Assembly: GCA_951406725.2 (NCBI GenBank)
Contig: OX597842.1
Location: 15,686,001-15,750,000 of the forward strand
Length of the DNA stretch: 64,000 bases
DNA from: Octopus vulgaris
Lineage: Eukaryota
Direction of reading: 5' to 3'
The notes beneath the pieces are model-generated. The model saw only the letters and a list, made by a program, of their open reading frames with translations, was not told the origin of the DNA and ran no database searches. Each line of letters opens with the position of its first letter. Within the stretch, counting starts at the first letter, position 1. Below are positions 1 through 55,485 of this stretch, in pieces. The translations under genes were made by a program, and so were the position numbers.

Positions 1-377
1 AGAAAAGGGCGTATGAAACCTCTGGTGCTAAATACACAAACTGAAGTGTTATTCAAGGCAGTTACTCAGCATCGATCTAAAGGTAAACGCCGTACACATT
101 ATACACACATGGTAATATAAATATTATACACACATGATAACAAAATCTTCCTTAGACAGAGACACGTAGTGGATTTGATGTTCCCCTTAATTACCACGAT
201 CTCATATATCTCCTATCTTAAAAGTGGACCCAGACTCACATTCACAAACATCCAAAAACAATAAAATGCATGTATAGAGAGACGGATGTACACCTTAAAT
301 TGAAGTATGGAAAGACATTACGGATTTAGGAAGATATCTTCAGTGAAATAGTATAAAAGAAGATTGATTCAACTTAC

Positions 378-449
378 AGAGTTGTTAAACTGGAGAGATT
401 TTGGAAAGTTTTTTCGTTGATTGCTTGGATATCGTTAAAACTCAAATCC
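378..449 (-). CDS. LRR exon 8 (DLSFNDIQAINEKTFQNLSSLTTL)
   Basis: 72 nt, ttccag / gtaagt, phase 2-2, no stop. Confidence 0.92.
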
Positions 450-3400
450 CTGGAAAATAAAATTGTGTCAAGAAGAACATTTATGGCAAGAAAAAGAAAA
501 AGATAATGAAGAAGAAGTAGATAATGATGATGATGATGAAGAAGAAGAAGAAAAAGGAAAAGAAGAAGGAGAAGAAGAAGAAGAAGAAGAAGAAGGAGAG
601 GAAAAAGAAGAAGGAGAAGAAGTGGAAGAGAAAGAAGAAAGAGAAGAAAAAGAAGAAGAAGAAGAAGAAGGAGGAGGAGGAGGAGGCGAGGGAGAAGAAG
701 AAGAACAAGAAGAAGAAAAAGAAGACAAAGAAGGAGAAGAGGAGCAACAAGTAGGAGATACTTCCTGAGAAGGAAACAAACACTAGTTGAGCGAAGTCCC
801 TAAATGGAAAAAATGCATGAAGGACACCATCCAAGCACCTCCCCACAACACATACACACAACTATCTTCTATAACACCAAAATTACCAACACCACCAATA
901 CCGCTGCCAGCACCACCCGCACCACACGCCATACAAATATCCCCTTCGAAATCACCTTCGTAAATTTCCCTGCAATCCACATATTGAAGCCCTAATGAAA
1001 TACATACAAAAAACTACTAACATCACACCAAAAGATCACAGCACCTAACGTTTCACCTCAAATACAAATACTCAGCATAACTAACAACGCCTTAATTTCT
1101 TGAGAAAAAACCTACCCCTTTGCGCTGGGAAATTTCCAAAGAACAATAACCAAAAGTTTATACGAAACCTGATCGTGGAAACTCCTACAACCACCGAGAA
1201 GGGTGAGAGAAAACATTCACCCTCTCCGCAGCCCAAAAAGTAAGTTGTGCATCATTTTGTTTTCCCATTTCTCTCATCATTGTTTTGCTCAAGCAAGGCA
1301 GTTTAAACGTGCGTGGACGGGGATCATTTTTCAAGTAAGGACGATTTCTAAACGACCTCAGTTCACTGGATTTGGACGGTGTAGTCATTAGTGAAGCCAG
1401 ACTGAGCGGACCACAAGTTTTCTTGCCCCTCTATGGAGGATATGAGATGTAACGATTCAGTGGCACCCGAGACAAGGCGATGAAGCTGCAATTTGGTTCC
1501 AGAAAGGTCTAGATCTAGAGATCAGTGCAGTCTTTGCGGACCCAGACGGCAACTCGTCGTCCTTTATGGGAATGGTAATGATGGTGATGCTTTCAGACTG
1601 GTCGCTGTCTATGCACCAACAAATGTTGGACATTAAGATTATTTCAGGCGTCCGGAAGCTTTTTTGGGAATGTTGCGTAGTTTAGTATTAGTAGGCGATT
1701 TCACAGAATCCTAAGATGCACGAATGGATTGTGAGGGGTCAAATGATAGAAGTGGAAACAAATGCCTCACAAACCTGCTCAGACGTTTCCAGCTGTCTGA
1801 CAAGTATCGCGCCCTCTTCAGAGTTACTGACGCACCCCCTGCCCCAGGGGACGCGCTCCTAGGTTAAGAACCACTGATCTCATGGTAAACAACATACATG
1901 ATATAGACACTGAATTACACACTAATTTTTATACACTCCCATTCACTCATCCATACACCGAGACAGGTATTTATATATAAACACAGGTATGCATTAAATA
2001 TGCCTCCTCAAGTGTCACACTGATATATATATATACCAACTATCAGAAATGCTACCACACTCACAGTCACAATCATTCGCAAACATCCCTTTAGAGAGAG
2101 AGAGAGAGAGAGGGGGGATACTTTAGATATAGAGGGCTGAGGAAGCTTAAGAGGATGGATGAGAATATATTAAATATTTAGAAACCTATCGGCAATGAAA
2201 TCCTGTGAACAAGACATATAGATTTGCTTACACTGTTAATGAATGATGTTGATGATGATGAGGATGATATCGAAATTGATGTTGTTGATGATCGATACAG
2301 ATAACAATGACGACACTAAAGTGATCAGGACGATAACAAAAAAATCGCTAATAATAATGGCGGCGAGGAGGAGGAAGTGAATTAATAGAAGAAGAAGAAG
2401 ATGGAGCAGAGGAAGAAGAGGAAAAAGAAGGAGGAGGATGAGAACGATGACAACAACAACAACAAGTTAAGACTATGTTGAAGCATCAGTGTATGAATAA
2501 AATAGTTCTAAATATACAAGCACAAAGAATATTCAAAGATGTTATTTAACGTCAACCTAGATGTATTCATCGTACATAATATACACACCGTATTACAAAC
2601 ACACGTGTTAATACGCTGCCATACACTCATTCATACACAGACATTACATATGCATGCACTAAATATTTCTCCTCAAGTATCACACTCGCATATATCTCAA
2701 ATCTCAGAAATGGGCCCACACTCACATACACACAGATTGAGAAGCAATAAAATACATCTTTAGAAAGACGGATGTCGGAGCCCTAAATGGAAGGATGGGA
2801 AAATATTACAGATTTACAAGTATATCATCAAGGAAATACTATAAAAGGAAACAGATTCAACTTACAGTTCTGTTAAACTGGACAGATTTTGGAATGTTCC
2901 TACTTTTATTTCTTGGATATTATTATCCCTCAAATTCCTGGAACATAAAATTGAGAAGAAAAGAAATTTACGTAACCGATTTGACAGAATGTTAAAGAGA
3001 ATGGCAAATCAATTCGATGATAGAAGAGATGGAAATCAGATTGCGAACGTGAGGAGCTGGTAATGATGGTGATGATAATGTTAGTGAGGTGGTATTGATA
3101 TAAATAATAATGAGTCAGGGAAGAAAATTTGGTGGTAGTGATGATGAGAAAATTATGATGTTGATGATGGGGGTAACGGTGTTGATGTTAATTATTCTAA
3201 TATTGATGGGGATTGCTATGTTTCTTCTTCTGATGAGGATGATGTCTGCGGTGGAGTTTCTCTTGGCGATGATGATGATGATGTTGAAATTTGTTAATAG
3301 TGGTGGCGATGAAGATGATAGTGTTGAAGATCCTCTGGATCTGATAGGAGTAATTTGCGAAAATAAATGATATTGATGATGATAAGGGCAATGATGAATT

Positions 3401-6400
3401 CGGCGATGGTTATTATTGAGGAGGGTGTGGAAGAGGAAGAAATGAAGAAGATGGTGGGCGGGGAAGTCAGAGATGAATATAAAGATGAAACAAAGGAGAT
3501 GAAAATATTATGAGACTTCATAACAAGGATCTTATGATGCAGATGATGGGGAGATGATGTTCATTTTCATTCTTATGATAACGATGCGGATTCGCAGCAT
3601 TTGTTGTGATGATGGATATGTCTAGAAGAAGAAGAAGAAGAAGAAGAAGAAGAAGAAGAAGAAGAAGAAAGAAGAAGAAGAAGAAGAAGAAGAAGAAGAA
3701 GAAAGAACAAGGAGAAGAAGATGAAGAAGGAGAAGAAGAAGAAGAAGAAGAAAGTAAGAAGAAAATGATGATGATGATAATGATGATGATGAAGAAGAAG
3801 AAGAAGAAGAGAAGAAGAAGAAAGAAGAAGAAGGAGAAGAAAAAGAAGAAGAAGAGGAAGAAGGAGAAGAAGAAAGTAAGAAGAAGAGGAGGAAGAAGAA
3901 GAAGGAGAAGAAGAAGAAAGAAGAAGAAGAAAGAAGAAGAATAAAGAAGAAGAAGAAGAAGAAGAAGAAGAAGAAGGAGAAGAAGAAGAAGAAAAGGAAG
4001 AAGAAGAACAACAACATCAAACGCAATAAGTTGGAGATGTGTTCAGAAAAGGGCGTATGAAACCTCTGGTGCTAAATACACAAACTGAAGTGTTATTCAA
4101 GGCAGTTACTCAGCATCGATCTAAAGGTAAACGCCGTACACATTATACACACATGCTAATATAATATTATACACACATGATAACAAACTCGTCCTTAGAC
4201 AGAGACACGTAGTGGATTTGATGTTCCCCTTAATTACCACGATCTCATATATCTCCTATCTTAAAAGTGGACCCAGACTCACATTCACAAACATCAAAAA
4301 ACAATAAATTGCATGTATAGAGAGACGGATGTAGACATTAATTTGAAGTATGGAAAGACATTACGATTTAGGAAGATATCTTCAGTGAAAAACTATAAAA
4401 GAAGATTGATTCAACTTACAGAGTTTTTAAACTGGAGAGATTTTGGAAAGTTTTTTCGTTGATTGCTTGGATATCGTTAAAACTCAAATCCCTGGAAAAT
4501 AAAATTGTGTCAAGAAGAACATTTATGGTAAGAAAAAGAAAAAGATAATGAAGAAGAAGTAGATAATGATGATGATGATGAAGAAGAAGAAGAAGAAAAA
4601 GAAAAAGAAGAAGGAGAGAAGAAGAAGAAGAAGAAGAAGAAGAAGGAGAAGAAAAAGAAGAAGGAGAAGAAGTGGAAGAAAAAGAAGGAGAAGAAAAAGA
4701 AGAAGAAGAAGAAGAAGAAGAAGGAGGAGGAGGAGGCGAGGGAGAAGAAGAAGGAGAAGAAGAAGAAAAAGAAGACAAAGAAGGAGAAGAGGAGCAACAA
4801 GTAGGAGATACTTCCTGAGAAGGAAACAAACACTAGTTGAGCGAAGTCCCTAAATGGAAAAAATGCATGAAGGACACCATCCAAGCACCTCCCCACAACA
4901 CATACACACAACTATCTTCTATAACACCAAAATTACCAACACCACCAATACCGCTGCCAGCACCACCCGCACCACACGCCATACAAATATCCCCTTCGAA
5001 ATCACCTTCGTAAATTTCCCTGCAATCCACATATTGAAGCCCTAATGAAATACATACAAAAAACTACCAACATCACACCAAACGATCACAGCACCTAACG
5101 TTTCACCTCAAATACAAATACTCAGCATAACTAACAACGCCTTAATTTCTTGAGAAAAAACCTACCCCTTTGCGCTGGGAAATTTCCAAAGAACAATAAC
5201 CAAAAGTTTATACGAAACCTGATCGTGGAAACTCCTACAACCACCGAGAAGGGTGAGAGAAACCATTCACCCTCTCCGCAGCCCAAAAAGTAAGTTGTGC
5301 ATCTTTTTGTTTTCCCATTTCTCTCATCATTGTTTTGCTCAAGCAAGGCAGTTTAAACGTGCGTGGACGGGGATCATTTTTCAAGTAAGGACGTTTTCTA
5401 AACGACCTCAGTTCACTGGATTTGGACGGTGTAGTCATTAGTGAAGCCAGACTGACCGGACCACAAGTTTTCTTGCCCCCTCTATGGAGGATATGAGATG
5501 TTACGTTTCAGTGGCACCCGAGACAAGGCGATGAAGCTGCAATTTGGTTCCAGAAAGGTCTAGATCTAGAGATCAGTGCAGTCTTTGCGGACCCAGACGG
5601 CAATCTCGTCGTCCTTTATGTGAATGGTACTGATGGTGATGCTTTCAGACTGGTCGCTGTCTATGCACCAACAAATGTTGGACATTAAGATTATTTCAGG
5701 CGTCCGGATGCTTTTTTGGGAATGTTGCGTACTTTAGTATTAGTAGGCGATTTCACAGAATCCTAAGATGCACGAATGGATTGTGAGGGGTCAAATGATA
5801 GAAGTGGAAACAAATGCCTCACAAACCTGCTCAGACGTTTCCAGCTGTCTGACAGGTATCGCGCCCTCTTCAGAGTTACTGACGCACCCCCTGCCCCAGG
5901 GGACGCGCTCCTAGGTTAAGAACCACTGATCTCATGGTAAACAACGTACATGATATAGACACTGAATTACACACTAATTTTTATACACTCCCATTCACTC
6001 ATCCATACACCGAGACAGGTATTTATATATAAACACAGGTATGCATTAACTATGCCTCCTCAAGTGTCACACAGATATATATATATATACCAACTGTCAG
6101 AAATGCTACCACACTCACAGTAACAATCATTCGCATATATCCCCTATCTTAAAAGTGGACCCAGACTTACATTCACAAACATCCAAAAACAATAAAATGC
6201 ATGTATAGAGAGACGGATGTACACCTTAAATTGAAGTATGGAAAGACATTACGCATTTAGGAAGATATCTTCAGTGAAATAGTATAAAAGAAGATTGATT
6301 CAACTTACAGAGTTTTTAAACTGGAGAGACTTTGGAAAGTGTTTTCGTTGATTGCTTGGATATCGTTATAACTCAAATCCCTGGTGAATAAAATTAAATC

Positions 6401-6582
6401 AAGAAGAACATTTATGGTAAGAAAAAGAAAAAGATGATGAGGAAGAAGTAGATAATGATGATGATGATGATGATGAAGAAGAACAAGAAGAAAAAGAAGA
6501 AGAAGAAGAAGAAGAAGGAAAAGAAGAAGGAGGGGAAGTACAAGAAGATGAAGAAGAATAAGAAGGAGGAGGAGGCGAGGGA

Positions 6583-6614
<32 letters not shown>

Positions 6615-9600
6615 AGAACAAGAAGAAAAAGAAGGGAAAGAAGGAGAAGAGGAGCAACAAGTAGGAGATACTTCCAGAGAAGGAAACAAACACTAGTGGA
6701 GCGAAATCCCGACATGGAAAAAATGCATGAAGGACACCATCCAAGCACCTCCCCACAACACATACACACAACTATCCTCTATAACACAAACATTACCATC
6801 ACCACCAATACCGCTGCCAGCACCACCCGCCATACAAATATCCCCTTCTAAATCACCTTCGTAAATTTCCCTGCAATCCACATATTGAAGCCCTAATGAA
6901 ATACATACATAAAACTACCAACATCACACCAAAAGTTCACAGCACCTAACGCTTCACCTCAAATACAAATACTCAGCATGAGTAACAACGCCTTAATTTC
7001 TTGAAAAAAAAATCTACCCCTTTGCGCTGGGAAATTTCCAAAGAACAATAACCAAAGGTTTATATGAAACCTGATCGTGGAAACTCCTACAACCATCGAG
7101 AAGCGTGGGAGAAACCATTCACCCTCGCAGCAGCCCAAAAAGTAAGTTGTGCATCATTTTGTTTTCCCATTTCTCTCATCATTGTTTTGCTCAAGCAAGG
7201 CAGTTTAAACGTGCGTGGACGGGGATCATTTTTCAAGTAAGGACGTTTTCTAAACGACCTCCGTTCACGGGATTTGGACGGTGTAGTCATTAGTGAAGCC
7301 AGACTGACCGGACCACAAGTTTTCTTGCCCTTCTATGGAGGATATGAGATGTAACGATTCAGTGGCACCCGAAACAAGGCGATGAAACTGCAATTTGGTT
7401 GCAGAAAGGTCTAGATCTAGAGATCAGTGTAGTCTTTGCGGACCCAGACGGCAATCTCGTCGTCCTTTATGTGAATGGTACTGATGGTGATGCTTTCAGA
7501 CTGGTCGCTGTCTATGCACCAACAAATGTTGGACAGTCAGATTATTTCAGGCGTCCGGAAGCTCTTTTGGGAATGTTGCGTACTTTAGTATTAGTAAGCG
7601 ATTTCAACAGAATCCTAAGATGCACGAATGGATTGTGAGGTGTCAAATGATAGAAGTGGAAACAAATGCCTCACAAACCTGCTCAGACGTTTCCAGCTGT
7701 CTGACGGGTATCGACAGGATTTCCCGAATGTGCCAATGTGGTCTTGGGCCAACCGCGTCGGGTCATCCAGGTCATATTTAGGTAAGGTTTTCATTACGAC
7801 AACGGAGAAGGGTAATATAAGTTGTCTACTTTTCCAAATCGTCAGCTATACCGTCCGCAAATTTGTGATATCTGATTTAATTTAGATTTCATAGATTTCC
7901 AGTTACTGAAAGCTGAACACGTCATACCTAGCATTCTAAGCTTACAGTGACCGGATTACAGAATTATTTATGCGGGCTTTGACAGGCGCAATTGTTAACA
8001 AGGCCTGGGGGTAGGCCCTAAAATAGCGGTTAATGCAAAATCAGATTTAGCAAGGCTTCCGTGCAAGAAATGAATGTTATACAGGGTGAGTTAGTTAAAT
8101 CCTTAAAATTGACCTTAAGGGTAAGCAGTGCAACTGATATGCTGACTGCGAGATTGGCCATTGACGAGCACTTCAGGGATAAGCACGAAGGGTGCATTAT
8201 CAGTGCTTTGAGATAGGGGGATCTAACGCTGCTCAACAGGCCCGGGTGATAGAGGCACAACGTGACAAGAAAGCTACCATTCAATCCCTGATTGACCAAA
8301 GTAGGTGTTTGGGATGAGTGCTTGGCCAAAACGTAGGTTGAATTTCTCCGATTTCCTACCGCGACTCCTGGGCAGCGAAACTGCGATGGGCTGATAACAG
8401 CTACAAAGTTAAGGGATTCTTTGACGGGCTGCACGAGGAATAAGTCGCCTAGTTTGGATGGCCTTACCTATGAACGTTATTATAGAATTCCAGATTTGAT
8501 TTAAGGCATTTTGGCAGATATCTACGACAACAAGCAACGAAATGGGAGAATTTCTAGCTCTGTGAGCCGAGGGACTCTGATACTCTATCGTCCCTTTCGA
8601 ACACGCGTGTTTTTTGTGCTCGTGAGTTTTGGATTTTTCTTGTGTCTTCAAACATGTATAATTTAGTTTGAACATTTAAAGTCTATAAAAGGGAACCTGC
8701 TTGAAGGGGGAGGTTTCCTGGACTATACGTATCGCCCTTTGGTGACGAATTTCTATCCTCTTTTGTATACTGTGAGTTTGATTTATGGCACTCGTTTTTT
8801 TATTCTTCTAAACATTGCCTCACGCCCTGGAGAAAGTAACACCCTCTCCCTCAATGCGAACAAGAGGAAAGATGTAAAAGTGTCGGCAAATGAAATCACG
8901 GCGGAGGAAATTCGAACGTCACTACAGCCAGCAAATCAATTGATACTAGCGAAATAAAGAAACATAAATTCGACAGTCACGGTTTCGCTTCCGTAGCAAA
9001 ACTCTACCAAGAAACAGTCAACATAAATATGGATGATATTTTAAAAATCAAAAATCTAATCGAAAGAAAAGGAACAAATGTCACAATGACCCCCACCCCA
9101 CCCCATGTGATATCACACAACCCACTCCATGAAGAGCTGTCACCTTCAAAAAGCTAATTCTAAATGACAAAGTTAGGTTTCCCTCCATAGTGATTCTAAA
9201 GACTGTAGTTCTCCTGCCGACCAACATCGGTCGGTGAGTTACTTACATTAACTTAAAAGTAAACTTTCCCAACGCGGTAGGCAACTTCCAAACAAACCTA
9301 AACAAACAGCTTTATAGAAGTCTGATCGTGGAAGCATTCACAGCCAGCCACTGGAGAGAAGAAAAAACATATTCACCCTCCCCTCAGCTAAAACCATATG
9401 TAACTATTCGTCCCGTTTTTTCCCCATTTTCATCCATCATGGTCTTGCTCAAGTTCAGTAGTTTAAATGTACGTGGCCTGGATCGCACTGGAAGCAAGGA
9501 AACCAATAGCAAAACAAGTCTGACAGGGCTGCAAACTTTCATGCCTCTCTACGATGGATACAAGATCTACGCGTCTCTGCGCCAGCCGAGAGGGAGTGGT

Positions 9601-15148: not shown

Positions 15149-15224
<76 letters not shown>

Positions 15225-17165: not shown

Positions 17166-17200
<35 letters not shown>

Positions 17201-32200: not shown

Positions 32201-35200
32201 CACTCATATATGAATGCACTTCTTCAGACACAGACGCAAATACATGCATTTGCTGAAAAGTTTCCTCTCAATTCTCACCCTTTCCTATATGCCATATCAT
32301 ATACATGGGGCTTCCCACTCTTTAACACACAATTACAGAAAGGTGGAGGATCATATAATCAAGTAAGGGACGATATTACAAATATGCAAACATAGCAGCA
32401 ATGTTATACTATAAATAAAAACTGATTTGACTTACAGTAGTTTTAAACTGGGCAGGTTTCTGAAGGTTTCAGGTTTTATAACATTCAGATTATTATTGTT
32501 CAAATATCTGGAACATAAAATTGATTTAAGATGAAAATTTATGGGACAGGTTTTTGGAAGTATATAACATATTTCGAGTAAAGAATTAGACTATGGAAAT
32601 CATGAAGAGTTGATTACGGTTCTGTTGAAATTGATAATGATGATGATGATGATGTTCAAATTTGTGCAACTAACTGCGGTTGTCTATGGTAATGAATAAA
32701 GTTGATGATGAACCTGACAATGTTGACGGCTGAGAGAAAGAATAGTGTTGCGGAGAACAGTCTCGGTAATGATGATGGGAACGAAGAACGTTTCGGGGAC
32801 CACTACCCTGGGATGATCATGAAGCAAGCAAGCGTGTGTTTATGCACGCACGAGTGTATGTAAGCATGTGTGTATGTATGTGTGTTTCTGTATGCGTGTG
32901 TGTGTTAACTCAATAGTTGAACATGAAGAACGAAGAATATTACATCTTCATAATTTATTTGTTGAAGCATTTTCTTCATATCACATTCATTGGTTAATCA
33001 GCCCAAGATTTCCTCAGGGTGCTAAAAAGTACCTGCTCGGATTTCAAATCCCTATTCCATTACGTTACATATGTGTGTGTGTGTGGCTCTGTATATATAT
33101 GTATGTATATGCATATGTATATACGAGGGGATATACTAAAGTAACCGTAAATGTTCTCTGTAAGACCAACCCGTTGTAGTTCAGGTTTCCGTCGCTAAAC
33201 TCCAATTGATGCGACTGTCAGGCATCAGTCAGCCAACCGGTGTTATCCGCTAGTGTTGTACTGCCGCGTAGTTCGTCTTTGTTTTGACGTGTTTCTGCTC
33301 AGTTCGTATGTTTTTTGCAATGGCTGGAACGAAGGAACATTGTGCTTCTGTGAAATTCTGTTTACTGCTGCTGAAAACTGCAGATGAAACAGTTTTCATG
33401 CATCCCATCACAACGATGATGCAATGGGCAAAGCACAAGTTTATGAATGGTTTTCTCGATTTAGGAATGGTCACTTGTCGCTTGAAAACCAACCTCATTC
33501 ATGACAACCGTCGACCTCCCAAACATCATGAAAATTCATGATCTGATCCTGGAGGACTGTCACTGAGCAATTGATGAACTTGTTGACATGTCAGTTTTGT
33601 CCTCGAGCTCCTGGCAATGAAGTTTGTGCGAGGAATTGTGAATGAAAAGCGTTCAAGCAAAATCTGTGCCTTGTTTGCTCACGGAATGTCAAAAACAGTC
33701 ACGGCTGAATGCGTGTCGTGAGCTAGAAGAACTGTTATGAGGTAATCCGAATGTTTTTCCGAAGGTCATCAGTGGTGACGAAAGCTGGTACTACGGAATT
33801 TGAAGATGTGGAAGTGAGGAAAGAAATCGATGGGGGCATTAAAAAGCATCACTTCGGAATATGTCCAACACGGATTCCAGTAGCTGAAAAGGCGCTTGGA
33901 ACGATGCATTGATTAAAATGGAGAATACTTTGAACACAAAAAAAGTGTATATATGTAAAACTAAGTGAATAATATAATATTTCAAAATTACGGTTTCTTT
34001 TGGGCACTCCGTCGTAAGTATGTACACACAAGCGGCTAAGGCCGAGCTTCCCTGGGATTATTAATACCTAAAATAGATATCATCTCATCATTTCCTTATT
34101 TTTGGGGTAAACTGTTGTTTAAAAGATGCCAAGACGCAAAAAATCCTCAGTTTGTCTGTGAATGTTAATTCACTGAGAATTGTAAATAAACAGAACATAA
34201 GTAAAATCTAAAATACACTTTACTTTTATATTTATATTTTCTGTGGTAAATGTTTTTATAACATACGCTACACATTTTCAAAGTATCTTTAAAGTAATTG
34301 TTTTTCTAACAAGTCAACTTTTACAATGACTAACGTAGTGCTTGAATTATACAACGTTCTTATTTCGCCCTTGGTTGCAGACAAGTGGTGAAGATCTCAC
34401 ATTTGATATTTAGGATGTCGGCTGGCAAGCTAAGACTTCATAGTTTTATCTTACAGAATATGGCTTTTTGTACTCTGTACCTTATATATCTTCGCCTTTG
34501 CAACTATACAACACATAACAAGGTTTTCTACACTCACAACCCTTTAATTACTAGATTTATTTTGATTGTGAAATGATGTAAAGGCTTGCTGATCATCATC
34601 TTGTAGGGAAGATTTGATAATTGTATTTTTATCACTTTTCGTTAGTCAATTCATGAGTCGTTTTGCATTTATTGGTCCATTTCGTTAAACCTAGTTTTAT
34701 TACACTTTCATGCTATTATATATATATAATTATAGCCAGATCGTTATATGTCCCTAATTACAATAATAATTATACATAAATGATGCTACCGATTCACATA
34801 GTAATGATAATTTAGAGCTCAGGCATTCAAAGCTGATATTATTTCTGTTTTCTTGCATTTTTTGGAATTACGAGTTTTCAGGTTGGCGCTGTTGATTAAT
34901 TTTTTGAATGATGGGCCATATTTTGGGCCACAACCGGTTGAGCCCTTTGTTTATCCCCGCAAGAATCGATGCCAGATGAAGAAATAATTATAGTTATAAG
35001 TCATTTGCATTATTCGGTAGCTTCATAACATCTATGTTAGCTAAGTCTAAAAGCGTTAGCGGTAATACATTTCGGAAACTACATAGAAGCCCCTTTGTCT
35101 AGCTTCGTATCATTGTCACCATTGGCCAATGGATGACTTTCTCACTGAGACTACACCGCTGTCATAGTGTTTCCCACGGCTTCGCCTGTAACCGTAGACT

Positions 35201-38200
35201 GAGTGGAAGATGGGTGATACGCTGAGCCAAAGGGCAGCTGTGTTTGCGCCAACAAAGTATTTCCTTATTTGACGTAATCCCTATATTCAAAGAATGTTCT
35301 ATTGTCCACCACCTGGTAAACTACCGAATAGTAGATTCTCACTGAAGATTTACACATTCGCACACACATATTCGTAGCCATCCTTAATTCGCGAGTCGAA
35401 CGAGTATGTCTTGGCAACATATCTAATGCTTTTACTAATTGCTTCAGGTGCCTAAGTATTTCCGAGCAGACATAGGTACTCTTTTATGTCTCCAACGCTA
35501 AACCTAACCCAGATGTCGCATCCAACACTTGACTGGTACACATTTACAGCTGAGTAGACTGGATGAATCCTGATCAACGTCCCAAACACCGAGCGTAGTT
35601 CAAGAACTGAACCAATCACATTATGATCGTGCAGCGACATGCTAATCACTGTGTCATATCTTTCACACACACTGAGGTACTACAAGTAGAAACTGATACC
35701 AACAGCTCAAATGCTGGATCCACGCTCAAATCACATCTAGTGCTATGGCAGTTTTAACAGTCAAAACATATCAGCTCAGATTTAATCTATTGGGTGAGGC
35801 TAAAGTCGCAGAGATGGGAACAGATTGCAAAAAATGATAGAATATCATAAAATGCCTGACAAGAAATTCAAAGTTGTCTCTTGAATAAAGTCCAACACCT
35901 TTTCACACAAAAACATCTAAAAATCAAATGATTCTGGCAGCCATAAATAATTCTCTTCTGTTTTCTTTGTGTCATGAAGGAAGTCACTTTTGAAGAAGAA
36001 CATCACTATAGGAGAAAGTAGATCCCGTGTATATCTAGGACGGAATTTAAAAGACATTTTTTTTCATTTTAGAACCAGAAAATATTTCGATCCTAGCAAC
36101 TTCCACTTTTTGACGCTCATGTAACCAAAGTAAGACCACTCTTTTTATTAACATTCCCTCAGTAATATTAACCGCTATGTTTAGTTCTTCATCCTCAGAA
36201 CATCGGATTCTGGAATGTCCTCCATGTTCTCGTCTTCTTTCCGGGAATTTATCTGTAACATTTTTAAACGGAGCATTACCATCATCACTCTCACCCATAT
36301 CACACAACCAGCGAAATTAATGAGCTCTACTCCTTCTTCAAAACGCAGAAAGTAAAAACAAGTGGGATTTGAACTTAAAATACAAAGAGCTAGAAGATTT
36401 CCATACGAGACCCAGTCCGACATCTCTACACCATGTCTAGACCACTGGCCTCTTTAAGTACGCAAACCGCCGTACGGTAAGGATGTCCTCGGCTAGATTT
36501 TAAGTCAGAATACCGAATGTTAGATTAGATACCACAAGGTGTCATTCAACTCGACGGCCTGCAGGTTTGGCCAATTTTTGACTAATTATGAATTAAAATT
36601 ATGAAAATTAAAAATGTCTAAATAATATATATCGTATATTCACCATCTGCAGATATACGGATTTCTATTTAATTCAGACAATCACAAATGTGTAGAGAAG
36701 CAAGTGAATTCGCTTGAATCGATCGAATATAGTATTGGAATATTTTATTTAAACTGGAAACTTGAAATGTTTAATGCAATATAATCTGTTCTACCGAAAA
36801 TTTGGGGGAGGGTGAATCGATTAGATCGACCCTAGTACGCAACTGGTATTTAATTTGCCGACCCCGAATGGATGAAAGGCAAAGTCGACTTCGGCGAAAT
36901 TTGAAGTCATAACGATTAATGCAATATAATACAAATCCTTTAATCTGAAATGATACTCAGGAAGAGTCGAACCCACTCTGTACGATCTAGGGTACTTTTC
37001 AGTTGAACTGTAACAAACAGAGCAGCTAAATCTTAAGCTTAAAGAATTTTGTAGAATTATAAATAATGTGTTTTTATTTCTAAAAACCTATCGGGTTTAT
37101 GATATCAACCTAAATTTTACCGATGGCGTCTTTAATGAAAATAGGTTTCATAATACCGTACTATTTTACATGTTTCATTTACCCAATTTCAGAGTCAGGC
37201 AATTTAAGCGGATCTCGTAATTATCTGCCGTTTAATAAGTCTAACAATATCACTTTTAATTATAAACGTAATATAGTACAGCAAAAATTAACTGTCATTC
37301 TGTTACTAAATCAGCTAATATCAATATAACTGTAACAATAAACATTTTAAGTTTAGGAAATGATGTTGCGAAATGCGGCACCCGGGGGTAGCCCAGCAAG
37401 CCAATCTGATAAAATTGGAGGAAGTAGGCATACCCGGCTGGATTATTTGCGTAATTAGGTTCTTCGTTGCCAGGTTCACTTCGACTGGTCACATTGCATC
37501 TTTACAAATCCACACTGTAATCAGTTCTTCGTTGTCTGAAGAACTCACACCAGCTGTTCACATCACCCAACTCTCATCCCTAACTCTTCCCATCGCCCAA
37601 CTCTTATCCGATTTTTAATTACCCACAGGGGTCTAACATAGACGTACAATACGCACATTTGGGGACAATTAACATATGAAAGAACAGGAAAAAAAGGAAA
37701 CTTTACAAATGAAGTTGGAACGTCTATCCCGACCGCGCTCCAGGATGGTCACGTTATTTCAATTACGTCATCTTTAAAATCAATCTGCACTTAATACTTT
37801 ATGTTACTTTTAATGTCCTCATAGTTCACCACTGTATCGCTGGGTTCGATGCTCCCCTCGGGTCCCAGTGCGTTTACAACTGAAGGGAATACATCTTTAA
37901 GCGTTCTATATTTGTCTTTCTCCATCAGGACACAATCTTTTTCGTAACCTTCCGAAAGGATCAATCTAACAATCCCTTTCCTTTCTGTTATTCTCCTTTC
38001 AAAATTTTGGGGTCGTACGATATGTTATTCAAAATAACGTGTTCCTGTGGACCTCTTCTGTCTGTATGTCTGTTCTTAATGTCTTTGTTACTCTGTGTTA
38101 TCATGCGTCCGTCTATGTTTCTTTGTGTCTGTGTGTCTATGTGCTTATGTGTCTGTAAGTCTGTGTGTTTGTGTGATTGTAAGTCTGTACATTTGCTTGG

Positions 38201-40062
38201 TGATGTTGTCCTGCTTGTATCATTTTCCCGCGGTCATCCCACAGGCGTACTGCTTCTACTTGTTGTTGGTTGGCTCACTTTTTCCTCTACTTTATATTTC
38301 TTCCGTTCCATTTCAGGCTGTGAACTCTTCCTTTCTCTCTTCCTCAACTTGACCTCCACAAACTCCATGTTCTCTTCCACTTCCTGGACCTGACTCTCCA
38401 CCTCCATCACGCTTTCTTGTATGTTTACCTCTGCTTTTTCCATCGTTATTCTGGGGCGCACCATCTTCTAATATGCCCCTTTTCACCACACCCAAGGCAC
38501 TTTGGAGGCCTCCCCACCAACATTACATCCAGTTTGTCTTCATTTAACAGCACCAATGACTCTGGTATTGCCTCGTATAGTTTCTGATCCGCCGCAAAAA
38601 TTATCTCTGACTCGTGTCCCCATCAATTGACTTGTTGGGTCCAGGTTACAATAATTAAACTACTTCGTTGTCTTCTTCCTCTTATGTGGTGAAAAGTGCT
38701 GCTAATATCCACTCTAACTCGATTCTCGGCGGGATCCTGTCCACCCTAATCCTAGTAGATCGTTTACCCTGGTAATTGTGCAGAAGTGTCCATCCCCCCC
38801 CCCCCCCCCGCTACTAACCTTGTGGCGTATCTTTTTGCCACTTCTTCGGAGACAAATGTGACCGCTACTGAACCATATCTTTTTCCTTTTGTAAAATAAT
38901 AAAAAAAACTTTATGTTTTCTTTCAGGTCCTTTAGGCATTCTTCCATCTCCTCCTTCGTGGCGTTCTCAAGTCCCTTATTTTTCTTTTGAAAACGTTTTG
39001 TACTCTATTACTTTATTTTCTCTCCCCGCCTTGTCTTTCTCTGTTGGTGTCAACTTTACGTTTGACCTTTCTCTCTTTACCATATCTTAGTATTTCTGTA
39101 GCAATTTTATATCGCAACATATTTCATTTTGTTCTAGCATGCTTGGGACGACAAAAGCTTGACTCTCCGTTGCTGCCACGTAGCTCTTCCTTTTCGTTAG
39201 TCAGTACCACCCACCAAACAATGATGGTGTTACACTCAAAGAACTGCTGCAAAGCAGCATAAAACAATCCTCAGCACAAAACAATCCTAAGCACACAGCA
39301 ACTCTCACAAAAATCACTCAAACAGCCCTCATCACCGGCTGACAGACACCACGCGTTCCATCACCAATTTGAATTGTCCACCTCACAGTAAAAACGTACG
39401 AAAGAACGCGTAACATGTTTTAAACCAGCCGCATGATCCATGAATTTTATTTCTCATTAGAATCAATTATAGATCCATTAGTGGTTGTCTACTGTAAAAC
39501 AGGAGTACAGTATTTCGATATCGATCAGTAGAATTATATTTATCGGAATATTTCTTCCAATTTTATACTCTCCTTCATAACAACAATATATGCAACGAAT
39601 TTTGCAACAGTTTTCATACATTCCTTTCCCTGAATCTTGCCATAAAGAGTTTTGCTGTAATAAACTAACATAATCAAAGTTCGGATATTGTAAATTAAAG
39701 ATTCCATGAGTCAAAATACACAGATAAATAGTTTACTTGACTTAACGGCAGTTAACATATTTGCCCTTTTTACTCCAACATAACATTATGAGGTATTCAG
39801 AACATTACCAACGAGAATCTAAAGCATTAAATGTGGAAGTAGAAAGTGTCTAATACTTACAAAAATTCAACATTCGGTGGAATGGGTTGCGGGATCAAAG
39901 TCAGTCGCCGATTGTAACAAGATATACGTGTCTGAGAATCATAGCATCTACAAATGCTGCAAATATCTGACACAGCATGAGACTCCAAACAGAAACTCAT
40001 AGAGAGTATCAACACAAACGTCAATTTCAATTGTTGGAACATATTTTCAGGCGTTGATTAAT
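378..40062 (-). CDS. Multi-exon extracellular LRR protein gene (partial; 3' part lies left of the window): signal peptide + LRRNT + at least 8 tandem 24-aa LRRs
   Basis: Nine exons with canonical AG/GT(AAG) sites splice in frame without stops: MFQQLKLTFVLILSMSFCLESHAVSDICSICRCYDSQTRISCYNRRLTLIPQPIPPNVEFL-YLNNNNLNVIKPETFRNLPSLKLL-YLNNNNLKEIQPETFQYLTNLKYL-RLNYNILNQMKTETFRNLTSLKIL-YLNNNNLKEIQPETFQYLTNLYEL-DLSYNDIQAINENTFQSLSSLKTL-DLSFNDIQAINEKTFQNLSSLKTL-NLRDNNIQEIKVGTFQNLSSLTEL-DLSFNDIQAINEKTFQNLSSLTTL. Fits the typical LRR consensus LxxLxLxxNxL/IxxIxxxxFxxL. Family (LGR-type, TLR, LRR-TM, secreted) cannot be assigned without the C-terminus. Confidence 0.88.
480..770. repeat. Degenerate (GAA/GAT)n tract on the acceptor side of LRR exon 8; equivalents at ~2240-2470, 3050-4020, 4520-4810, 6410-6670, 23250-23680, 24190-24800, 30430-30920, 31430-32080
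   Basis: Direct inspection; produces the poly-E/K/S/F ORFs in the track. Confidence 0.95.
770..1810 (+). mobile_element. Tx1/L1-like LINE fragment (ORF1 end + endonuclease start) captured in the duplicated unit; second copy at ~4810-5860
   Basis: Reads IVLLKQGSLNVRG and FRLVAVYAPTN, homologous to the EN domain at 9439 (MVLLKFSSLNVRGL); frameshifted. Confidence 0.75.
2190..2240 (-). pseudogene. Relic of a deleted LRR exon (donor and last ~9 exonic nt only)
   Basis: Plus-strand cggcaatgaaatcc...gatttgcttac-actgttaa resembles the donor flank of real exons (cggcaatgatatac...gatttaacttac, 31191-31230). Minus strand reads TTAACAGT|gtaagc versus TTAACAGAACT|gtaagt in exon 7. It sits at the expected position in the module periodicity. 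Confidence 0.6.
2866..2937 (-). CDS. LRR exon 7 (NLRDNNIQEIKVGTFQNLSSLTEL)
   Basis: 72 nt, ttccag / gtaagt, phase 2-2, no stop. Confidence 0.92.
4420..4491 (-). CDS. LRR exon 6 (DLSFNDIQAINEKTFQNLSSLKTL)
   Basis: 72 nt, ttccag / gtaagt, phase 2-2; visible at the end of ORF 4416..4829. Confidence 0.92.
6309..6380 (-). CDS. LRR exon 5 (DLSYNDIQAINENTFQSLSSLKTL)
   Basis: 72 nt, caccag / gtaagt, phase 2-2; visible at the end of ORF 6305..6769. Confidence 0.92.
6680..8560 (+). mobile_element. Decayed Tx1/L1-like LINE (longer version of the captured fragment; EN to RT N-terminus)
   Basis: EN motifs in ORFs 7399 and 7628 (VAVYAPTN, DFNRIL, WSWANR); KSPSLDGLTYE at ~8440. Confidence 0.8.
8850..12460 (+). 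mobile_element. Decayed Tx1/L1-like LINE: ORF1 remnant, EN (9439-9981), RT (FRPVTLLNADFKIL; SVHQGCSLFSLLY; YADDVT), 3' UTR
   Basis: ORF 9328..9981, ORF 11009..11215 with the YADD motif, GGLGMPWL at ~11605. Confidence 0.88.
12560..14740 (+). mobile_element. Tx1-like LINE with gag-like ORF1 remnant, ORF2 internally deleted, 3' UTR retained
   Basis: SFAAVVK motif, knuckle remnant KPICYLCG at ~13515; ORF1 tail homologous to 770-1250 and 9320-9420; 14460-14740 resembles the 12200-12460 3' end. Confidence 0.65.
15960..16720 (-). mobile_element. Penelope-like element remnant (GIY-YIG endonuclease, CGRPNC motif)
   Basis: ORFs 16254..16451 (CGRPNCEIF...NLIYVLT) and 15975..16232 (GQTKSLRRRMALHRSQI...ETLFIEKYRPLLN). 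Confidence 0.8.
17573..18010 (+). mobile_element. Mariner transposon 5' fragment
   Basis: aataatgcggttttttcaa TIR-like start shared with the 19284 element; GQWVPHELSE motif at ~17920. Confidence 0.75.
18024..18661 (+). mobile_element. Non-autonomous Helitron
   Basis: A|TC start, 3' hairpin cccg-agcaacgc-cggg followed by CTAG|T end (AT target, no TSD). Confidence 0.85.
19284..20056 (+). mobile_element. Internally deleted mariner element with both TIRs and TA flanks
   Basis: Left ttgggtcattccataaataatgcggttttt versus right revcomp ttgagtcatcccacaaataatgcacttttt; HTH remnant LYEFNKGNNAT; HQDNA and APSDNHLFRSL motifs. Confidence 0.85.
23991..24062 (-). CDS. LRR exon 4 (YLNNNNLKEIQPETFQYLTNLYEL)
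   Basis: 72 nt, ttccag / gtaagt, phase 2-2; positional duplicate of exon 2. Confidence 0.92.
25157..25228 (-). CDS. LRR exon 3 (RLNYNILNQMKTETFRNLTSLKIL)
   Basis: 72 nt, ttccag / gtaagt, phase 2-2; positional duplicate of exon 1. Confidence 0.92.
25843..26690 (+). mobile_element. Decayed mariner element (copy in lower Y block; right end replaced)
   Basis: tacgagggg TIR; KVITGDES first catalytic D; homologous to 33122-34016. Confidence 0.75.
31231..31302 (-). CDS. LRR exon 2 (YLNNNNLKEIQPETFQYLTNLKYL)
   Basis: 72 nt, ttccag / gtaagt, phase 2-2, no stop. Confidence 0.92.
32436..32507 (-). CDS. LRR exon 1 (YLNNNNLNVIKPETFRNLPSLKLL)
   Basis: 72 nt, ttccag acceptor / gtaagt donor, phase 2-2, no stop. 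Confidence 0.92.
33122..34016 (+). mobile_element. Decayed mariner element with both TIRs
   Basis: Left tacgaggggatatactaaagtaaccgtaa versus right revcomp tacgacggagtgcccaaaagaaaccgtaa; ISGDESWYYG motif. Confidence 0.8.
37750..39350 (-). mobile_element. Probable retroelement ORF1/gag-like remnant in the first coding intron
   Basis: Charged coiled-coil ORF 38234..38464, multiple stops; class not identifiable. Confidence 0.35.
39861..40042 (-). CDS. First coding exon: signal peptide + cysteine-rich LRR N-cap
   Basis: ATG at 40042; hydrophobic leader LTFVLILSMSFC; C-x2-C-x-C-x8-C cap followed by LTLIPQPIP. Ends phase 2 (TT|gtaagt, plus-strand acttac 39855-39860). Upstream acceptor tcttacag at 40063-40070 implies a 5'UTR intron. 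Confidence 0.9.
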
Positions 40063-47050: not shown

Positions 47051-47390
47051 ATATCAGAATGGGACCGCCACACACAGCGTAGATGGAGCGGAGCAAGCAA
47101 TCTAATGCTGTGGTCATGGAGTGTTACTAACAGAGCAGCCCGGTAGAATAAAAATGGAGCTCAAATTAGGGGTTACCGACGACGTATGTATGATCATTGT
47201 AGAGAAAAGTGATTGTTCCAACTAACGGAACAGATACTATGAGATCAAGCTACAGTAATAAGAAAAAAATCGTTGGTTCACAGAGGTGGAGCTCGAAGCT
47301 ATATAAGAGACGGGTCTTGGAAAATAGCAGCAGAGATAGCAATGAAAATTATTATTATTATTATTTTTTTTTTTATTATTATTATTATTA

Positions 47391-47518
<128 letters not shown>

Positions 47519-47523
47519 CATTA

Positions 47524-47573
<50 letters not shown>

Positions 47574-54189: not shown

Positions 54190-55485
<1,296 letters not shown>

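What the first reader, a model, noticed from the sequence alone, without database searches (positions are those of the whole stretch)
378..40062. Hidden LRR cassette receptor: eight interchangeable 72-nt single-repeat exons behind one signal/N-cap exon
Seen: one SP+LRRNT exon and eight exons of exactly 72 nt, all phase 2-2, all with AG/GTAAG sites and no stops, embedded in otherwise decayed DNA. The array continues past the window edge, because position 1 is already inside another repeat unit. Known: one-LRR-per-72-nt-exon architecture occurs in LGR/glycoprotein-hormone-type receptors, and LRR cassettes underlie variable receptors (agnathan VLRs by DNA assembly, brown-algal LRR genes by exon shuffling; Dscam does it with Ig exons by splicing). 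Inference: any subset of exons can be skipped or swapped without a frameshift (up to 256 subsets from these eight alone). With ongoing duplication, loss and diversification, this is a candidate variable pattern-recognition receptor system in a mollusc.
Basis: partly seen in the sequence, partly recalled or inferred. Interest (0 to 1): 0.9.

Follow-up and report, generated by a model that had tools for sequence, protein, structure and literature searches.

The report
Octopus adhesion-receptor gene with cassette LRR exons
This is the front end of an octopus-specific adhesion-type G-protein-coupled receptor gene whose binding domain is built from single-repeat 72-base exons. These exons are being duplicated, lost and rewritten unusually fast, but nothing shows that it is an immune receptor.

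Summary
On the minus strand there is one signal-peptide/LRRNT exon (39861-40062) and eight exactly 72-nt LRR exons. All have CAG|..|GTAAGT sites, all are phase 2-2, none has a stop, and every junction codon reads Leu.

It is not a hidden or unknown kind of gene. Its first exon is 83% identical to that of an Octopus vulgaris "ADGRG6-like" adhesion GPCR. It belongs to an Octopus-only family of more than 60 proteins: LRR, LRRCT, Cys-rich region, GAIN/GPS, secretin-type 7TM. That expansion is already published (PMC6408891). Paralogous loci have the same exon design.

New here:
- The orthologous O. vulgaris locus (93-97% identical) has only 3 LRR exons where the window has 7.
- Several exons differ 3.5-9 times more than their flanking introns, mainly at concave-face residues.
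- RefSeq isoforms of paralogues differ by whole 24-aa repeats.

So cassette use and rapid turnover are supported. The immune "pattern-recognition" reading, the LGR reading and VLR-like assembly are not. The 3' part of this gene lies outside the window, and splicing of this particular gene is untested.

The parts
50015..50131 (-). Candidate first 5'-UTR exon (promoter-proximal)
   Evidence: Matches exon 1 of the O. vulgaris model CAI9743452 (P0133) at 92% aa identity but contains a stop in the window, so it is probably non-coding.
40701..40868 (-). Candidate second 5'-UTR exon
   Evidence: Matches exon 2 of the O. vulgaris model P0133 at 86% and contains a stop in the window.
39861..40062 (-). 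First coding exon: 20 nt of 5'UTR, signal peptide (MFQQLKLTFVLILSMSFCLESHA) and LRRNT cysteine cap. It ends in phase 2.
   Evidence: phmmer gives 83% identity to O. vulgaris ADGRG6-like P0121, E=5.9e-24. Against the O. vulgaris orthologue, the signal-peptide part has 1 difference in 69 nt and the mature part has 25 in 113 nt, while the introns differ by 6.2%.
32436..32507 (-). LRR exon L1 (YLNNNNLNVIKPETFRNLPSLKL)
   Evidence: It differs 18% from orthologue V1 while its flanks differ 2.7% (p=1e-6). A 17-nt tract at its 5' end is identical to L2/L4, which points to micro-conversion.
31231..31302 (-). LRR exon L2 (YLNNNNLKEIQPETFQYLTNLKY)
   Evidence: It has no counterpart in the O. vulgaris locus L004.
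25157..25228 (-). LRR exon L3 (RLNYNILNQMKTETFRNLTSLKI), the tandem duplicate of L1
   Evidence: L1 and L3 differ at 13 of 72 exon bases, against 14 of 700 bases in the flanks (p=1e-7).
23991..24062 (-). LRR exon L4, the tandem duplicate of L2
   Evidence: L2 and L4 differ at 4 of 72 exon bases, against 7 of 699 flank bases (p=0.014).
6309..6380 (-). LRR exon L5 (DLSYNDIQAINENTFQSLSSLKT)
   Evidence: It is one of three copies of the O. vulgaris V2 type.
4420..4491 (-). LRR exon L6 (DLSFNDIQAINEKTFQNLSSLKT)
   Evidence: It is identical (0 of 72 differences) to O. vulgaris V2.
2866..2937 (-). LRR exon L7 (NLRDNNIQEIKVGTFQNLSSLTE)
   Evidence: It differs 6.9% from V3 while its flanks differ 1.9% (p=0.02).
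378..449 (-). LRR exon L8 (DLSFNDIQAINEKTFQNLSSLTT). The array probably continues beyond position 1.
   Evidence: Window 1-2089 repeats 4045-6143 at 97%. In the paralogous contig L001 a further LRR exon follows 1.1 kb downstream of the matching exon.
20099..37700 (.). 7.2-kb tandem segmental duplication in 2.4 copies (20099-27322, 27322-34554, 34554-37700). Each full copy carries two LRR exons.
   Evidence: Self-BLAST at 88-96% identity. The O. vulgaris locus lacks the 10.2 kb corresponding to window 21802-31992.
1..7713 (.). 1.9-4-kb tandem units carrying L5, L6/L7 and L8 (1-2089 matches 4045-6143; 200-1809 and 4243-5861 match 6131-7713)
   Evidence: Self-BLAST at 92-97% identity.

Best explanation
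The window holds the 5' part (two UTR exons, the signal-peptide/LRRNT exon and at least eight LRR exons) of a member of the Octopus-specific LRR-adhesion-GPCR family, which databases annotate as 'ADGRG6-like'.

Shown:
- The ligand-binding LRR solenoid is encoded one repeat per symmetrical 72-nt phase-2 exon, with a split Leu codon at each junction.
- The array grows and shrinks by tandem duplication and deletion of exon-plus-intron units. This is fast enough that sister genomes differ, 7 exons against 3.
- Some exons and the LRRNT cap change several-fold faster than their introns, mostly at concave-face positions.

Inferred:
- The exon-limited change comes from a mix of short-tract conversion between neighbouring exons and selected point substitutions.
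- The exons are used as cassettes, so that transcripts differ in the number and identity of LRRs, as RefSeq isoforms of paralogues do. This would tune what the receptor's N-terminal fragment binds.
- Signalling would go through GAIN/GPS autoproteolysis and a secretin-type 7TM encoded to the left of the window.
For: Family membership:
- The first exon gives 27 phmmer hits. All 20 whose source was looked up, including the best 15, are Octopus proteins; the two non-Octopus entries (unnamed ENA proteins P0142, P0145) are weak multi-LRRNT matches. The best is P0121 at 83% identity, whose model carries LRR, GAIN_ADGRA3 and 7tm_2.
- A search with full-length P0159 returns 63 Octopus proteins, many of them LRR+GPS+7tm_2. 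The next non-Octopus hit scores only 118 bits.

Same exon design in paralogous loci L001, L002 and L003:
- 5, 5 and 15 intact 72-nt LRR exons with the same conserved splice flanks.
- In L003 the array is followed, in the same gene model, by exons for the Cys-rich region, GAIN and GPS (P0155 residues 240-566).

Orthologue: O. vulgaris OX597842.1:14.79-14.84 Mb is collinear with the window at 93-97% identity. It lies inside a tandem cluster of at least 12 family genes.

Turnover: internal duplications; 7 exons against 3 in the orthologous interval; decayed exon copies in L001 and L003.

Diversification:
- Exon versus flank divergence is 18% vs 2% (L1/L3, p=1e-7), 18% vs 2.7% (L1/V1), 6.9% vs 1.9% (L7/V3) and 14% vs 6.2% (exon 1).
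- 11 of 18 replacements fall on the 6 concave positions out of 23 (p=0.002).
- A 17-nt tract is shared between L1 and L2.

Cassette use:
- O. sinensis isoforms of 525, 501 and 477 aa, and of 157 and 133 aa, differ by exact 24-aa repeats, including substitution of one repeat for another.
- Only 3 of 15 old but intact LRR exons are in the one O. vulgaris model for L003.
Against: - The GAIN/7TM part of this particular gene was not recovered. It lies outside the window and outside L004. The nearest annotated downstream GAIN+7TM model in O. vulgaris starts 356 kb away.
- The only O. vulgaris model at the orthologous locus (P0133, 'hypothetical protein') skips all LRR exons and looks spurious.
- No transcript of this gene was examined. 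Isoform evidence comes from gene models of paralogues, and short reads map ambiguously to repeated exons.
- All eight exons have strong consensus splice sites, which also fits constitutive inclusion.
- Synonymous and non-synonymous divergence are both raised in the fast exons (dN about equal to dS, 0.2-0.37). Positive selection is therefore not demonstrated separately from gene conversion.
- Concave positions are also the least constrained positions in any LRR.
Confidence: 0.65

Rival explanations
1. It is the same LRR-adhesion-GPCR gene, but the LRR exons are constitutive. All are always included, and the array is simply a recently expanded LRR domain. The isoform models in paralogues are annotation noise.
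For: All eight exons have strong consensus sites (pyrimidine tract, CAG, GTAAGT). The conserved intron flanks of about 40 nt can be explained by splice signals plus the duplication history. No docking or selector-like RNA pairing was found beyond shuffled controls.
Against: RefSeq isoforms of two different paralogous genes differ by exact single repeats. In L003, 12 old and intact exons are absent from the transcript-informed model (annotation method in PMC10700109).
Confidence: 0.25
2. It is a non-functional or truncated 5' duplicate, or an LRR-only secreted protein. The array is not joined to any 7TM, either as a decaying by-product of cluster duplication or as a stand-alone LRR gene.
For: The downstream part was not found. 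The O. vulgaris orthologue is annotated only as a 212-aa hypothetical protein that uses none of the LRR exons. Many family models in databases are LRR-only. Pseudo-exons exist in paralogous loci.
Against: - All 8 exons are intact with perfect splice sites, and the window has no decayed copy.
- The signal-peptide part has 1 difference in 69 nt against 6.2% in the introns.
- L6 is identical to V2 across species.
- Fast exons exceed the intron rate rather than equalling it, which is not the pattern of neutral decay.
- LRR-only models are expected from fragmented annotation of genes longer than 100 kb.
Confidence: 0.15
3. One reading: a variable immune pattern-recognition receptor system, like Dscam or VLR in logic, that diversifies by exon choice.
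For: The exons are interchangeable in-frame cassettes. Copy number turns over rapidly and change concentrates on the concave face. PMC6408891 reports gill and skin expression for its octopus-specific GPCR groups, including the adhesion group with LRR-bearing members, in Callistoctopus minor.
Against: - No immune domain (TIR, Death, NACHT) was tested or found for this gene.
- The family is adhesion GPCR. In O. bimaculoides the published octopus-specific GPCR groups are expressed mainly in axial nerve cord, suckers and skin (PMC6408891).
- No challenge-dependent expression data exist.
- No somatic rearrangement signals are present.
Confidence: 0.07
4. It is an ordinary LGR or glycoprotein-hormone-type receptor with a conserved 1:1 orthologue.
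For: LGR4 and LGR5 ectodomains are among the best solved-structure matches. Gonadotrophin receptors are also built from similar-sized single-LRR exons with all introns in phase 2 (as stated in PMC11378527).
Against: Relatives that share the diagnostic first exon carry GPS and 7tm_2, not 7tm_1. The family is Octopus-specific and multi-copy, not 1:1. The LGR similarity is generic LRR similarity; IGFALS and TLR3 score as well or better.
Confidence: 0.02

Closest known systems
Octopus-specific adhesion-GPCR expansion ('group 3' of Ritschard et al. 2019, PMC6408891; annotated 'ADGRG6-like' in O. vulgaris and O. sinensis)
   Same: The SP/LRRNT exon is homologous (83% identity). The LRR exon design is the same. 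The orthologous locus sits in the tandem cluster on O. vulgaris chromosome OX597842.1. Full-length relatives have LRR, LRRCT, a Cys-rich region, GAIN/GPS and 7tm_2.
   Different: The paper noted LRRs in only 5 of 22 sequences and did not describe the single-repeat exon arrays, their copy-number change between species or the exon-limited divergence. Identity of this family with 'group 3' is inferred from architecture, not checked gene by gene. The 7TM part of this gene was not seen.
ADGRE5/CD97 (and ADGRE2): adhesion GPCRs whose N-terminal EGF repeats are alternatively spliced
   Same: It is an adhesion GPCR whose tandem extracellular repeats are included in different numbers. ADGRE5 carries 3-5 EGF repeats, with different ligand affinity for each layout (PMC13197933). 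This is the closest working analogy.
   Different: The repeats are EGF, not LRR. The family is vertebrate and small. No rapid exon birth and death has been reported. Splicing of the octopus gene is not yet shown.
ADGRA2/ADGRA3 (GPR124/GPR125): vertebrate LRR-bearing adhesion GPCRs
   Same: They have N-terminal LRRs plus GAIN plus a secretin-type 7TM. Pfam GAIN_ADGRA3 weakly hits octopus family members.
   Different: They have a few fixed LRRs plus Ig and HormR domains and are conserved single-copy genes. The octopus family has a different Cys-rich module after the LRRCT and is massively expanded. Orthology was not tested.
Glycoprotein-hormone receptors and LGRs
   Same: One LRR per exon of similar size, with all introns in phase 2 (stated in PMC11378527, citing Koo 1991 and Kobe & Deisenhofer 1994). 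The ectodomain sequence is similar.
   Different: They have a rhodopsin-type 7TM, are conserved orthologues and have a stable exon number.
Brown-algal ROCO LRR genes (PMC11378527)
   Same: 72-bp phase-2 exons each encode one LRR. There is exon shuffling, several splice variants, and positively selected sites on the concave face.
   Different: They are cytoplasmic LRR-ROC-COR GTPases in a stramenopile, so the resemblance is convergent or reflects a shared exon-shuffling logic, not homology.
Dscam1 and agnathan VLR
   Same: The idea is the same: a repertoire built from arrays of interchangeable modules.
   Different: Dscam uses mutually exclusive Ig exon clusters with docking/selector RNA pairing, and none was detected here. 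VLRs assemble cassettes that lack splice sites by somatic gene conversion, whereas here every cassette is an ordinary exon.

Membership tests
Octopus LRR-adhesion GPCR ('ADGRG6-like') expansion | Family-specific signal-peptide + LRRNT first exon | tested here: met
   phmmer of the 60-aa exon product gives 27 hits. All 20 whose source was looked up, including the best 15, are Octopus family members; two weak hits (P0142, P0145) are unnamed ENA proteins. The best is 83% identical (P0121, with LRR+GAIN+7tm_2) at E=5.9e-24.
Octopus LRR-adhesion GPCR ('ADGRG6-like') expansion | LRR region encoded by single-repeat 72-nt phase-2 exons with conserved splice flanks | tested here: met
   The same design, with the same flank consensus (..ttttatgttccag | gtaagttgaatc..), is seen in L001, L002, L003 and L004.
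Octopus LRR-adhesion GPCR ('ADGRG6-like') expansion | Location in the tandem family cluster | tested here: met
   The orthologous O. vulgaris locus (14.815-14.841 Mb of OX597842.1) lies between family models at 14.66-14.69 Mb and 15.20-15.23 Mb. At least 12 members are on that chromosome.
Octopus LRR-adhesion GPCR ('ADGRG6-like') expansion | LRRCT, Cys-rich module, GAIN/GPS and secretin-type 7TM in the same gene | not testable with these tools
   The gene runs off the left edge of the window, and locus L004 ends at the same place. The feature is shown only for paralogues (L003/P0155, P0159, P0171).
LGR / glycoprotein-hormone receptor | Rhodopsin-type (7tm_1) transmembrane domain after the LRR ectodomain, and conserved 1:1 orthology | tested here: not met
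   Relatives that share the first exon have GPS and 7tm_2. The family is lineage-specific and multi-copy. This was tested on relatives, not on this gene's own 3' end.
Agnathan VLR-type assembly | Germline cassettes without splice sites that flank an incomplete gene and are copied in somatically | tested here: not met
   All eight cassettes are ordered on the same strand and have a canonical acceptor and donor. Somatic DNA was not examined.
Dscam-type mutually exclusive exon clusters | Docking/selector RNA complementarity between intron elements | tested here: not met
   Duplex energies between the downstream and upstream intron flanks of the eight exons (mean -5.6 kcal/mol) do not exceed shuffled controls (mean -5.95). 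Only the 45-50 nt next to each exon were tested.
Dscam-type mutually exclusive exon clusters | Transcripts that contain alternative members of an exon array | tested here: inconclusive
   RefSeq isoform models of O. sinensis paralogues show both skipping and substitution of single LRRs. No transcript data exist for this gene.
Toll-like receptor / LRR immune receptor | TIR or another immune signalling domain | tested here: not met
   No TIR is found in any family member scanned. The one 'toll-like receptor 5' name (P0156) is an automatic label on an LRR + Cys-rich + HRM-type protein. This gene's own 3' end was not seen.

The most novel reading that the evidence does not exclude
The Octopus LRR-adhesion-GPCR cluster may be a true diversity-generating receptor repertoire. 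Dozens of genes would each carry an array of interchangeable single-LRR exons that are spliced combinatorially. The arrays would be remodelled within about 2.5 million years by exon duplication, deletion and exon-to-exon conversion, under selection on the concave binding face. This would give octopus sensory, neural or barrier tissues a large, individually variable set of surface recognition specificities, for chemotactile, self/non-self or microbial recognition.
Probability: 0.2. Interest if true: 0.85.

Novelty: new variant of a known kind. Interest (0 to 1): 0.5.

Why it matters
Octopus-specific GPCR expansions are already proposed to underlie cephalopod novelties such as suckers and the axial nerve cord (PMC6408891), but how their ectodomains diversify has not been described. 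This locus shows a concrete mechanism. The binding domain is made of single-repeat symmetrical exons with a fixed Leu junction codon. They can be added, lost, converted and probably skipped without breaking the protein. Exon number changes between sister genomes, and sequence change is focused on the binding face. If long-read cDNA confirms combinatorial use, it would be an invertebrate adhesion-GPCR counterpart of ADGRE5 repeat splicing on a much larger scale, and a testable candidate for recognition diversity in cephalopods. If splicing proves constitutive, it remains a clear example of birth-and-death evolution at the level of exons.

Tried and rejected
1. LGR or hormone-receptor identity: rejected, because relatives carry GPS and 7tm_2.
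2. More LRR exons or pseudo-exons in the long introns (8-23 kb, 33-39.8 kb) or upstream (40-64 kb): none found by tblastn or HMM.
3. RNA pairing between the conserved intron flanks, as a Dscam-like or looping mechanism: no signal above shuffles.
4. Pure positive selection as the cause of the fast exons: not upheld, because dS is raised as much as dN. A 17-nt tract shared by L1 and L2 shows some conversion, but most variant sites have no donor among the 36 sampled exons. The cause is left unresolved.
5. Assembly artefact for the tandem copies: unlikely, because the copies differ by 4-16% and differ most inside exons.
6. Recovering the 3' end of the gene:
   - The P0121 locus is too long to fetch.
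   - P0002 and P0135 are not on record.
   - L004 ends level with window position 1921.
   - The neighbouring GAIN+7TM models are 125 kb upstream and 356 kb downstream and have no LRR exons within 10 kb.
7. The window's own product is not present in the protein collections searched. No row was marked as window-encoded.
8. The source species could not be fixed. The window is 93-97% identical to O. vulgaris at the orthologous locus and mosaic (82-96%) to an O. sinensis unplaced contig. It is therefore probably a member of the O. vulgaris/sinensis complex; this is inference.

Full report
**1. What is in the sequence**

The gene is on the minus strand. A scan for AG + 72 nt + GT[AG]AG with an open frame finds eight LRR-encoding exons there and none on the plus strand:
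- L1 32436-32507
- L2 31231-31302
- L3 25157-25228
- L4 23991-24062
- L5 6309-6380
- L6 4420-4491
- L7 2866-2937
- L8 378-449

Each has a pyrimidine tract plus CAG before it and GTAAGT after it.

The first coding exon runs 39861-40062. Its acceptor AG is at 40064-40063 and the ATG at 40042. It encodes MFQQLKLTFVLILSMSFCLESHA|VSDICSICRC... (signal peptide plus LRRNT) and ends TT|GTAAGT in phase 2.

All exons end in TT or CT and all LRR exons begin with A or G. Every possible junction is therefore a Leu codon, which is the first Leu of the next repeat.

The spliced 252-aa product scores LRR_8 at E=2e-55. It folds as a solenoid with a strand every 24 residues (AF2 single sequence, pLDDT 75.7). 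One hundred Markov simulations of the window gave no LRR-like exon. tblastn and a repeat HMM find no other intact or decayed LRR copy in the window.

**2. Internal structure of the locus**

Self-comparison shows two sets of tandem repeats:
- A 7.2-kb tandem unit in 2.4 copies (20099-27322, 27322-34554, 34554-37700; 88-96% identity). Each full copy carries two exons: L3+L4 and L1+L2. Those two exons are themselves an older 340-bp duplicate pair at about 84% identity.
- Units of 1.9-4 kb at the 3' side. 1-2089 matches 4045-6143 at 97%. 200-1809 and 4243-5861 match 6131-7713 at 92%. These carry L8, L6/L7 and L5.

The introns hold (AAG)n and other microsatellites and retroelement fragments. One has an endonuclease-like ORF at 9328-9981 and one a zf-RVT ORF at 42265-43047. 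This is ordinary octopus intron content.

**3. What gene it is**

The spliced product's best protein hits are short Octopus sinensis 'LRRC4-like' models with the same signal peptide.

An exhaustive phmmer search with the first exon alone returned only 27 proteins. All 20 whose source was looked up, including the best 15, are from O. vulgaris, O. sinensis or O. bimaculoides; two weak multi-LRRNT hits (P0142, P0145) are unnamed ENA proteins. The best is P0121 (O. vulgaris 'adhesion G-protein coupled receptor G6-like', 83% identity). It has LRR, GAIN_ADGRA3 and 7tm_2 hits and a gene range of 119 kb.

Longer members show the full layout: SP-LRRNT, n LRRs, a characteristic last repeat (..YEDGAFLFLPSI..), LRRCT, a Cys-rich module, an HRM-like region, GAIN/GPS and a secretin-type 7TM.

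A search with full-length P0159 found 63 Octopus proteins and then dropped to 118 bits for the best non-Octopus protein.

This fits the octopus-specific adhesion-GPCR expansion reported by Ritschard et al. 2019 (PMC6408891). They saw LRRs in 5 of 22 members. For their octopus-specific GPCR groups, which include this adhesion group, they reported expression mainly in axial nerve cord, suckers and skin (O. bimaculoides) or gill (C. minor). Equating the two families is my inference from architecture.

**4. The exon design is a family trait**

Three paralogous loci have the same design:
- L001: O. sinensis contig, 5 exons.
- L002: O. sinensis chromosome, 5 exons.
- L003: O. vulgaris P0155 locus, 15 exons.

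In each, one SP/LRRNT exon is followed by intact 72-nt LRR exons. In L003 the array is followed, within the same model, by exons for the Cys-rich region, GAIN and GPS (P0155 residues 240-566).

Across 26 non-redundant exons, the first 20 intron bases on each side are more conserved (68-70% mean pairwise identity) than the exons themselves (61%). Conservation fades to background by about 60-100 nt. The structural LRR positions are nearly invariant and the rest are highly variable. A few truncated pseudo-exons exist in L001 and L003.

**5. Orthologous locus and turnover**

O. vulgaris OX597842.1:14,794,724-14,841,463 (L004) is collinear with window 50578 to 1921 at 93-97% identity. It contains the first exon and only three LRR exons, V1-V3. 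The same interval of the window has seven. The correspondences are:
- L1 and L3 correspond to V1.
- L2 and L4 have no counterpart; 10.2 kb (window 21802-31992) is absent from L004.
- L5, L6 and also L8 correspond to V2.
- L7 corresponds to V3.

Because L1/L2-type flanks are only about 84% alike, the L2 type predates the split of the two genomes. Both gain and loss must therefore have occurred. O. vulgaris and O. sinensis are said to have diverged about 2.5 Mya (PMC10700109). The window's species is not known, but its identity level suggests that complex.

The copies differ by 4-16%, which argues against assembly artefacts. Population data are still needed.

**6. Exon-limited divergence**

Between the tandem copies, L1 and L3 differ at 13 of 72 exon bases but at 14 of 700 flanking bases (p=1e-7). 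L2 and L4 differ at 4 of 72 against 7 of 699 (p=0.014).

Between the window and the O. vulgaris orthologue:

| Comparison | Exon divergence | Flank divergence | p |
|---|---|---|---|
| L1 vs V1 | 18% | 2.7% | 1e-6 |
| L3 vs V1 | 15% | 3.9% | 3.5e-4 |
| L7 vs V3 | 6.9% | 1.9% | 0.02 |
| Exon 1 | 14% | 6.2% | 6e-4 |
| L6 vs V2 | 0 of 72 | 2.0% | not significant |
| L8 vs V2 | 1 of 72 | 2.5% | not significant |

In exon 1, 25 of the 26 differences fall in the mature LRRNT part and only 1 in the 69-nt signal-peptide part.

Amino-acid replacements fall preferentially on the six positions per repeat that form the concave face in the LxxLxLxxNxL motif (11 of 18, p=0.002). The strand register is confirmed by the model.

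Nei-Gojobori estimates show dS raised as much as dN (about 0.2-0.37). A 17-nt tract at the 5' end of L1 is identical to L2/L4. Short-tract conversion between exons therefore contributes. Most other variant sites have no donor among the 36 sampled exons. I cannot separate conversion from selected substitutions with these data. Neutral decay is excluded, because the exon rate exceeds the intron rate.

**7. Splicing**

No transcript data for this gene are available here. Indirect evidence:
- RefSeq isoforms X3-X9 of one O. sinensis paralogue are 525, 501 and 477 aa long. They differ by the presence, absence or substitution of exact 24-aa repeats.
- Isoforms X1 and X2 of the L001 gene differ by its first LRR exon.
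- The single O. vulgaris model for L003 uses 3 of 15 intact, mutually diverged LRR exons. That annotation drew on Iso-Seq, RNA-seq, protein alignments and ab initio prediction (PMC10700109).

Against regulated use, splice sites are uniformly strong and no intron-intron pairing signal was found. I rate cassette use of this gene's exons at roughly even odds or slightly better.

**8. Comparison with known systems**

- Similar-sized single-LRR exons with all introns in phase 2 are known from gonadotrophin receptors, and exact 72-bp phase-2 LRR exons from brown-algal ROCO genes, which also show splice variants and concave-face selection (PMC11378527).
- Alternative inclusion of tandem extracellular repeats in an adhesion GPCR is established for ADGRE5 (3-5 EGF repeats; PMC13197933).
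- LRR-bearing adhesion GPCRs exist in vertebrates (the ADGRA subfamily).

This locus combines these features inside a lineage-specific expansion and adds rapid turnover at the level of exons. It is not an LGR, because relatives have GPS and 7tm_2. It is not VLR-like, because the cassettes are ordinary exons. Nothing ties it to immunity.

**9. Verdict**

Most likely this is the 5' portion of an Octopus LRR-adhesion GPCR. Its LRR array evolves by exon birth, death and conversion, and it is probably spliced as cassettes (confidence 0.65 for the package; family membership alone about 0.85).

Novelty: a new variant of a known kind. Interest 0.5. The most novel reading that remains open is a combinatorially spliced, fast-evolving recognition repertoire. 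I give it a probability of about 0.2.

Noticed in passing
window 488-740, 4530-4790, 6419-6650: Long (AAG)n arrays on the plus strand read as roughly 230-260-nt (CUU)n pyrimidine tracts in the pre-mRNA. They start about 40 nt upstream of the 3' splice sites of L8, L6 and L5. Similar tracts lie a few hundred nt from L1-L4 (23252-23676, 24526-24798, 30457-30556, 31766-32077). They may be binding platforms for pyrimidine-tract proteins, or they may only be microsatellites carried along with the duplication unit.
   Followed up: no
window 39861-40042 vs L004 20471-20652: Within the first coding exon, the signal-peptide codons are almost invariant between the window and O. vulgaris (1 difference in 69 nt). 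The adjoining LRRNT codons differ at 25 of 113 nt, often in runs of 2-4 adjacent bases.
   Followed up: partly
window 13618-13839 (minus strand): A low-complexity hydrophobic ORF in the 17.6-kb intron is 90% identical at protein level to the terminal exon of the O. vulgaris model CAI9743452. That model splices from inside exon 1 to this exon and skips every LRR exon. It is either a spurious model or an alternative short transcript.
   Followed up: partly
L003 13312-54184 (O. vulgaris OX597842.1, 13.39-13.47 Mb): There are fifteen intact 72-nt LRR exons in the P0155 gene, but only three of them are in the annotated protein. Two further copies, at 38189 and 41378, lack their 5' halves.
   Followed up: partly
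L001 33563, 34051, 34661 (O. sinensis VCDQ01005429.1): Three truncated LRR pseudo-exons lie among the intact ones. The contig is a mosaic relative to the window: 95-96% identical over several kb but only 82% around the first exon. This suggests unequal exchange between paralogous arrays.
   Followed up: partly
window 9328-9981 (+), 42265-43047 (+), 44674-46785 (-): These are retroelement remnants. One is an endonuclease/exonuclease/phosphatase-like ORF in the large intron (Pfam E=2.8e-5). One is a zf-RVT ORF upstream of the gene (E=2.5e-5). Three are unassigned ORFs on the minus strand. Related copies occur in L001.
   Followed up: partly
window 47348-47573, 54187-54685, 55176-55483: Very long (ATT)n, (TAA)n and (AAT)n microsatellites of up to 166 copies lie in the upstream region. 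GC content falls to 27% around 54-56 kb.
   Followed up: no
proteins P0135, P0138, P0141, P0154-P0156 (family members): Between the LRRCT and the GAIN domain the family carries a conserved roughly 90-residue module with about 10 cysteines (..CQTCSG..C....C.G.EPVC....SCST...C......C......C..CC.GNLCN..). It resembles a three-finger/Ly6-uPAR pattern by eye, but no Pfam family was assigned to it.
   Followed up: no
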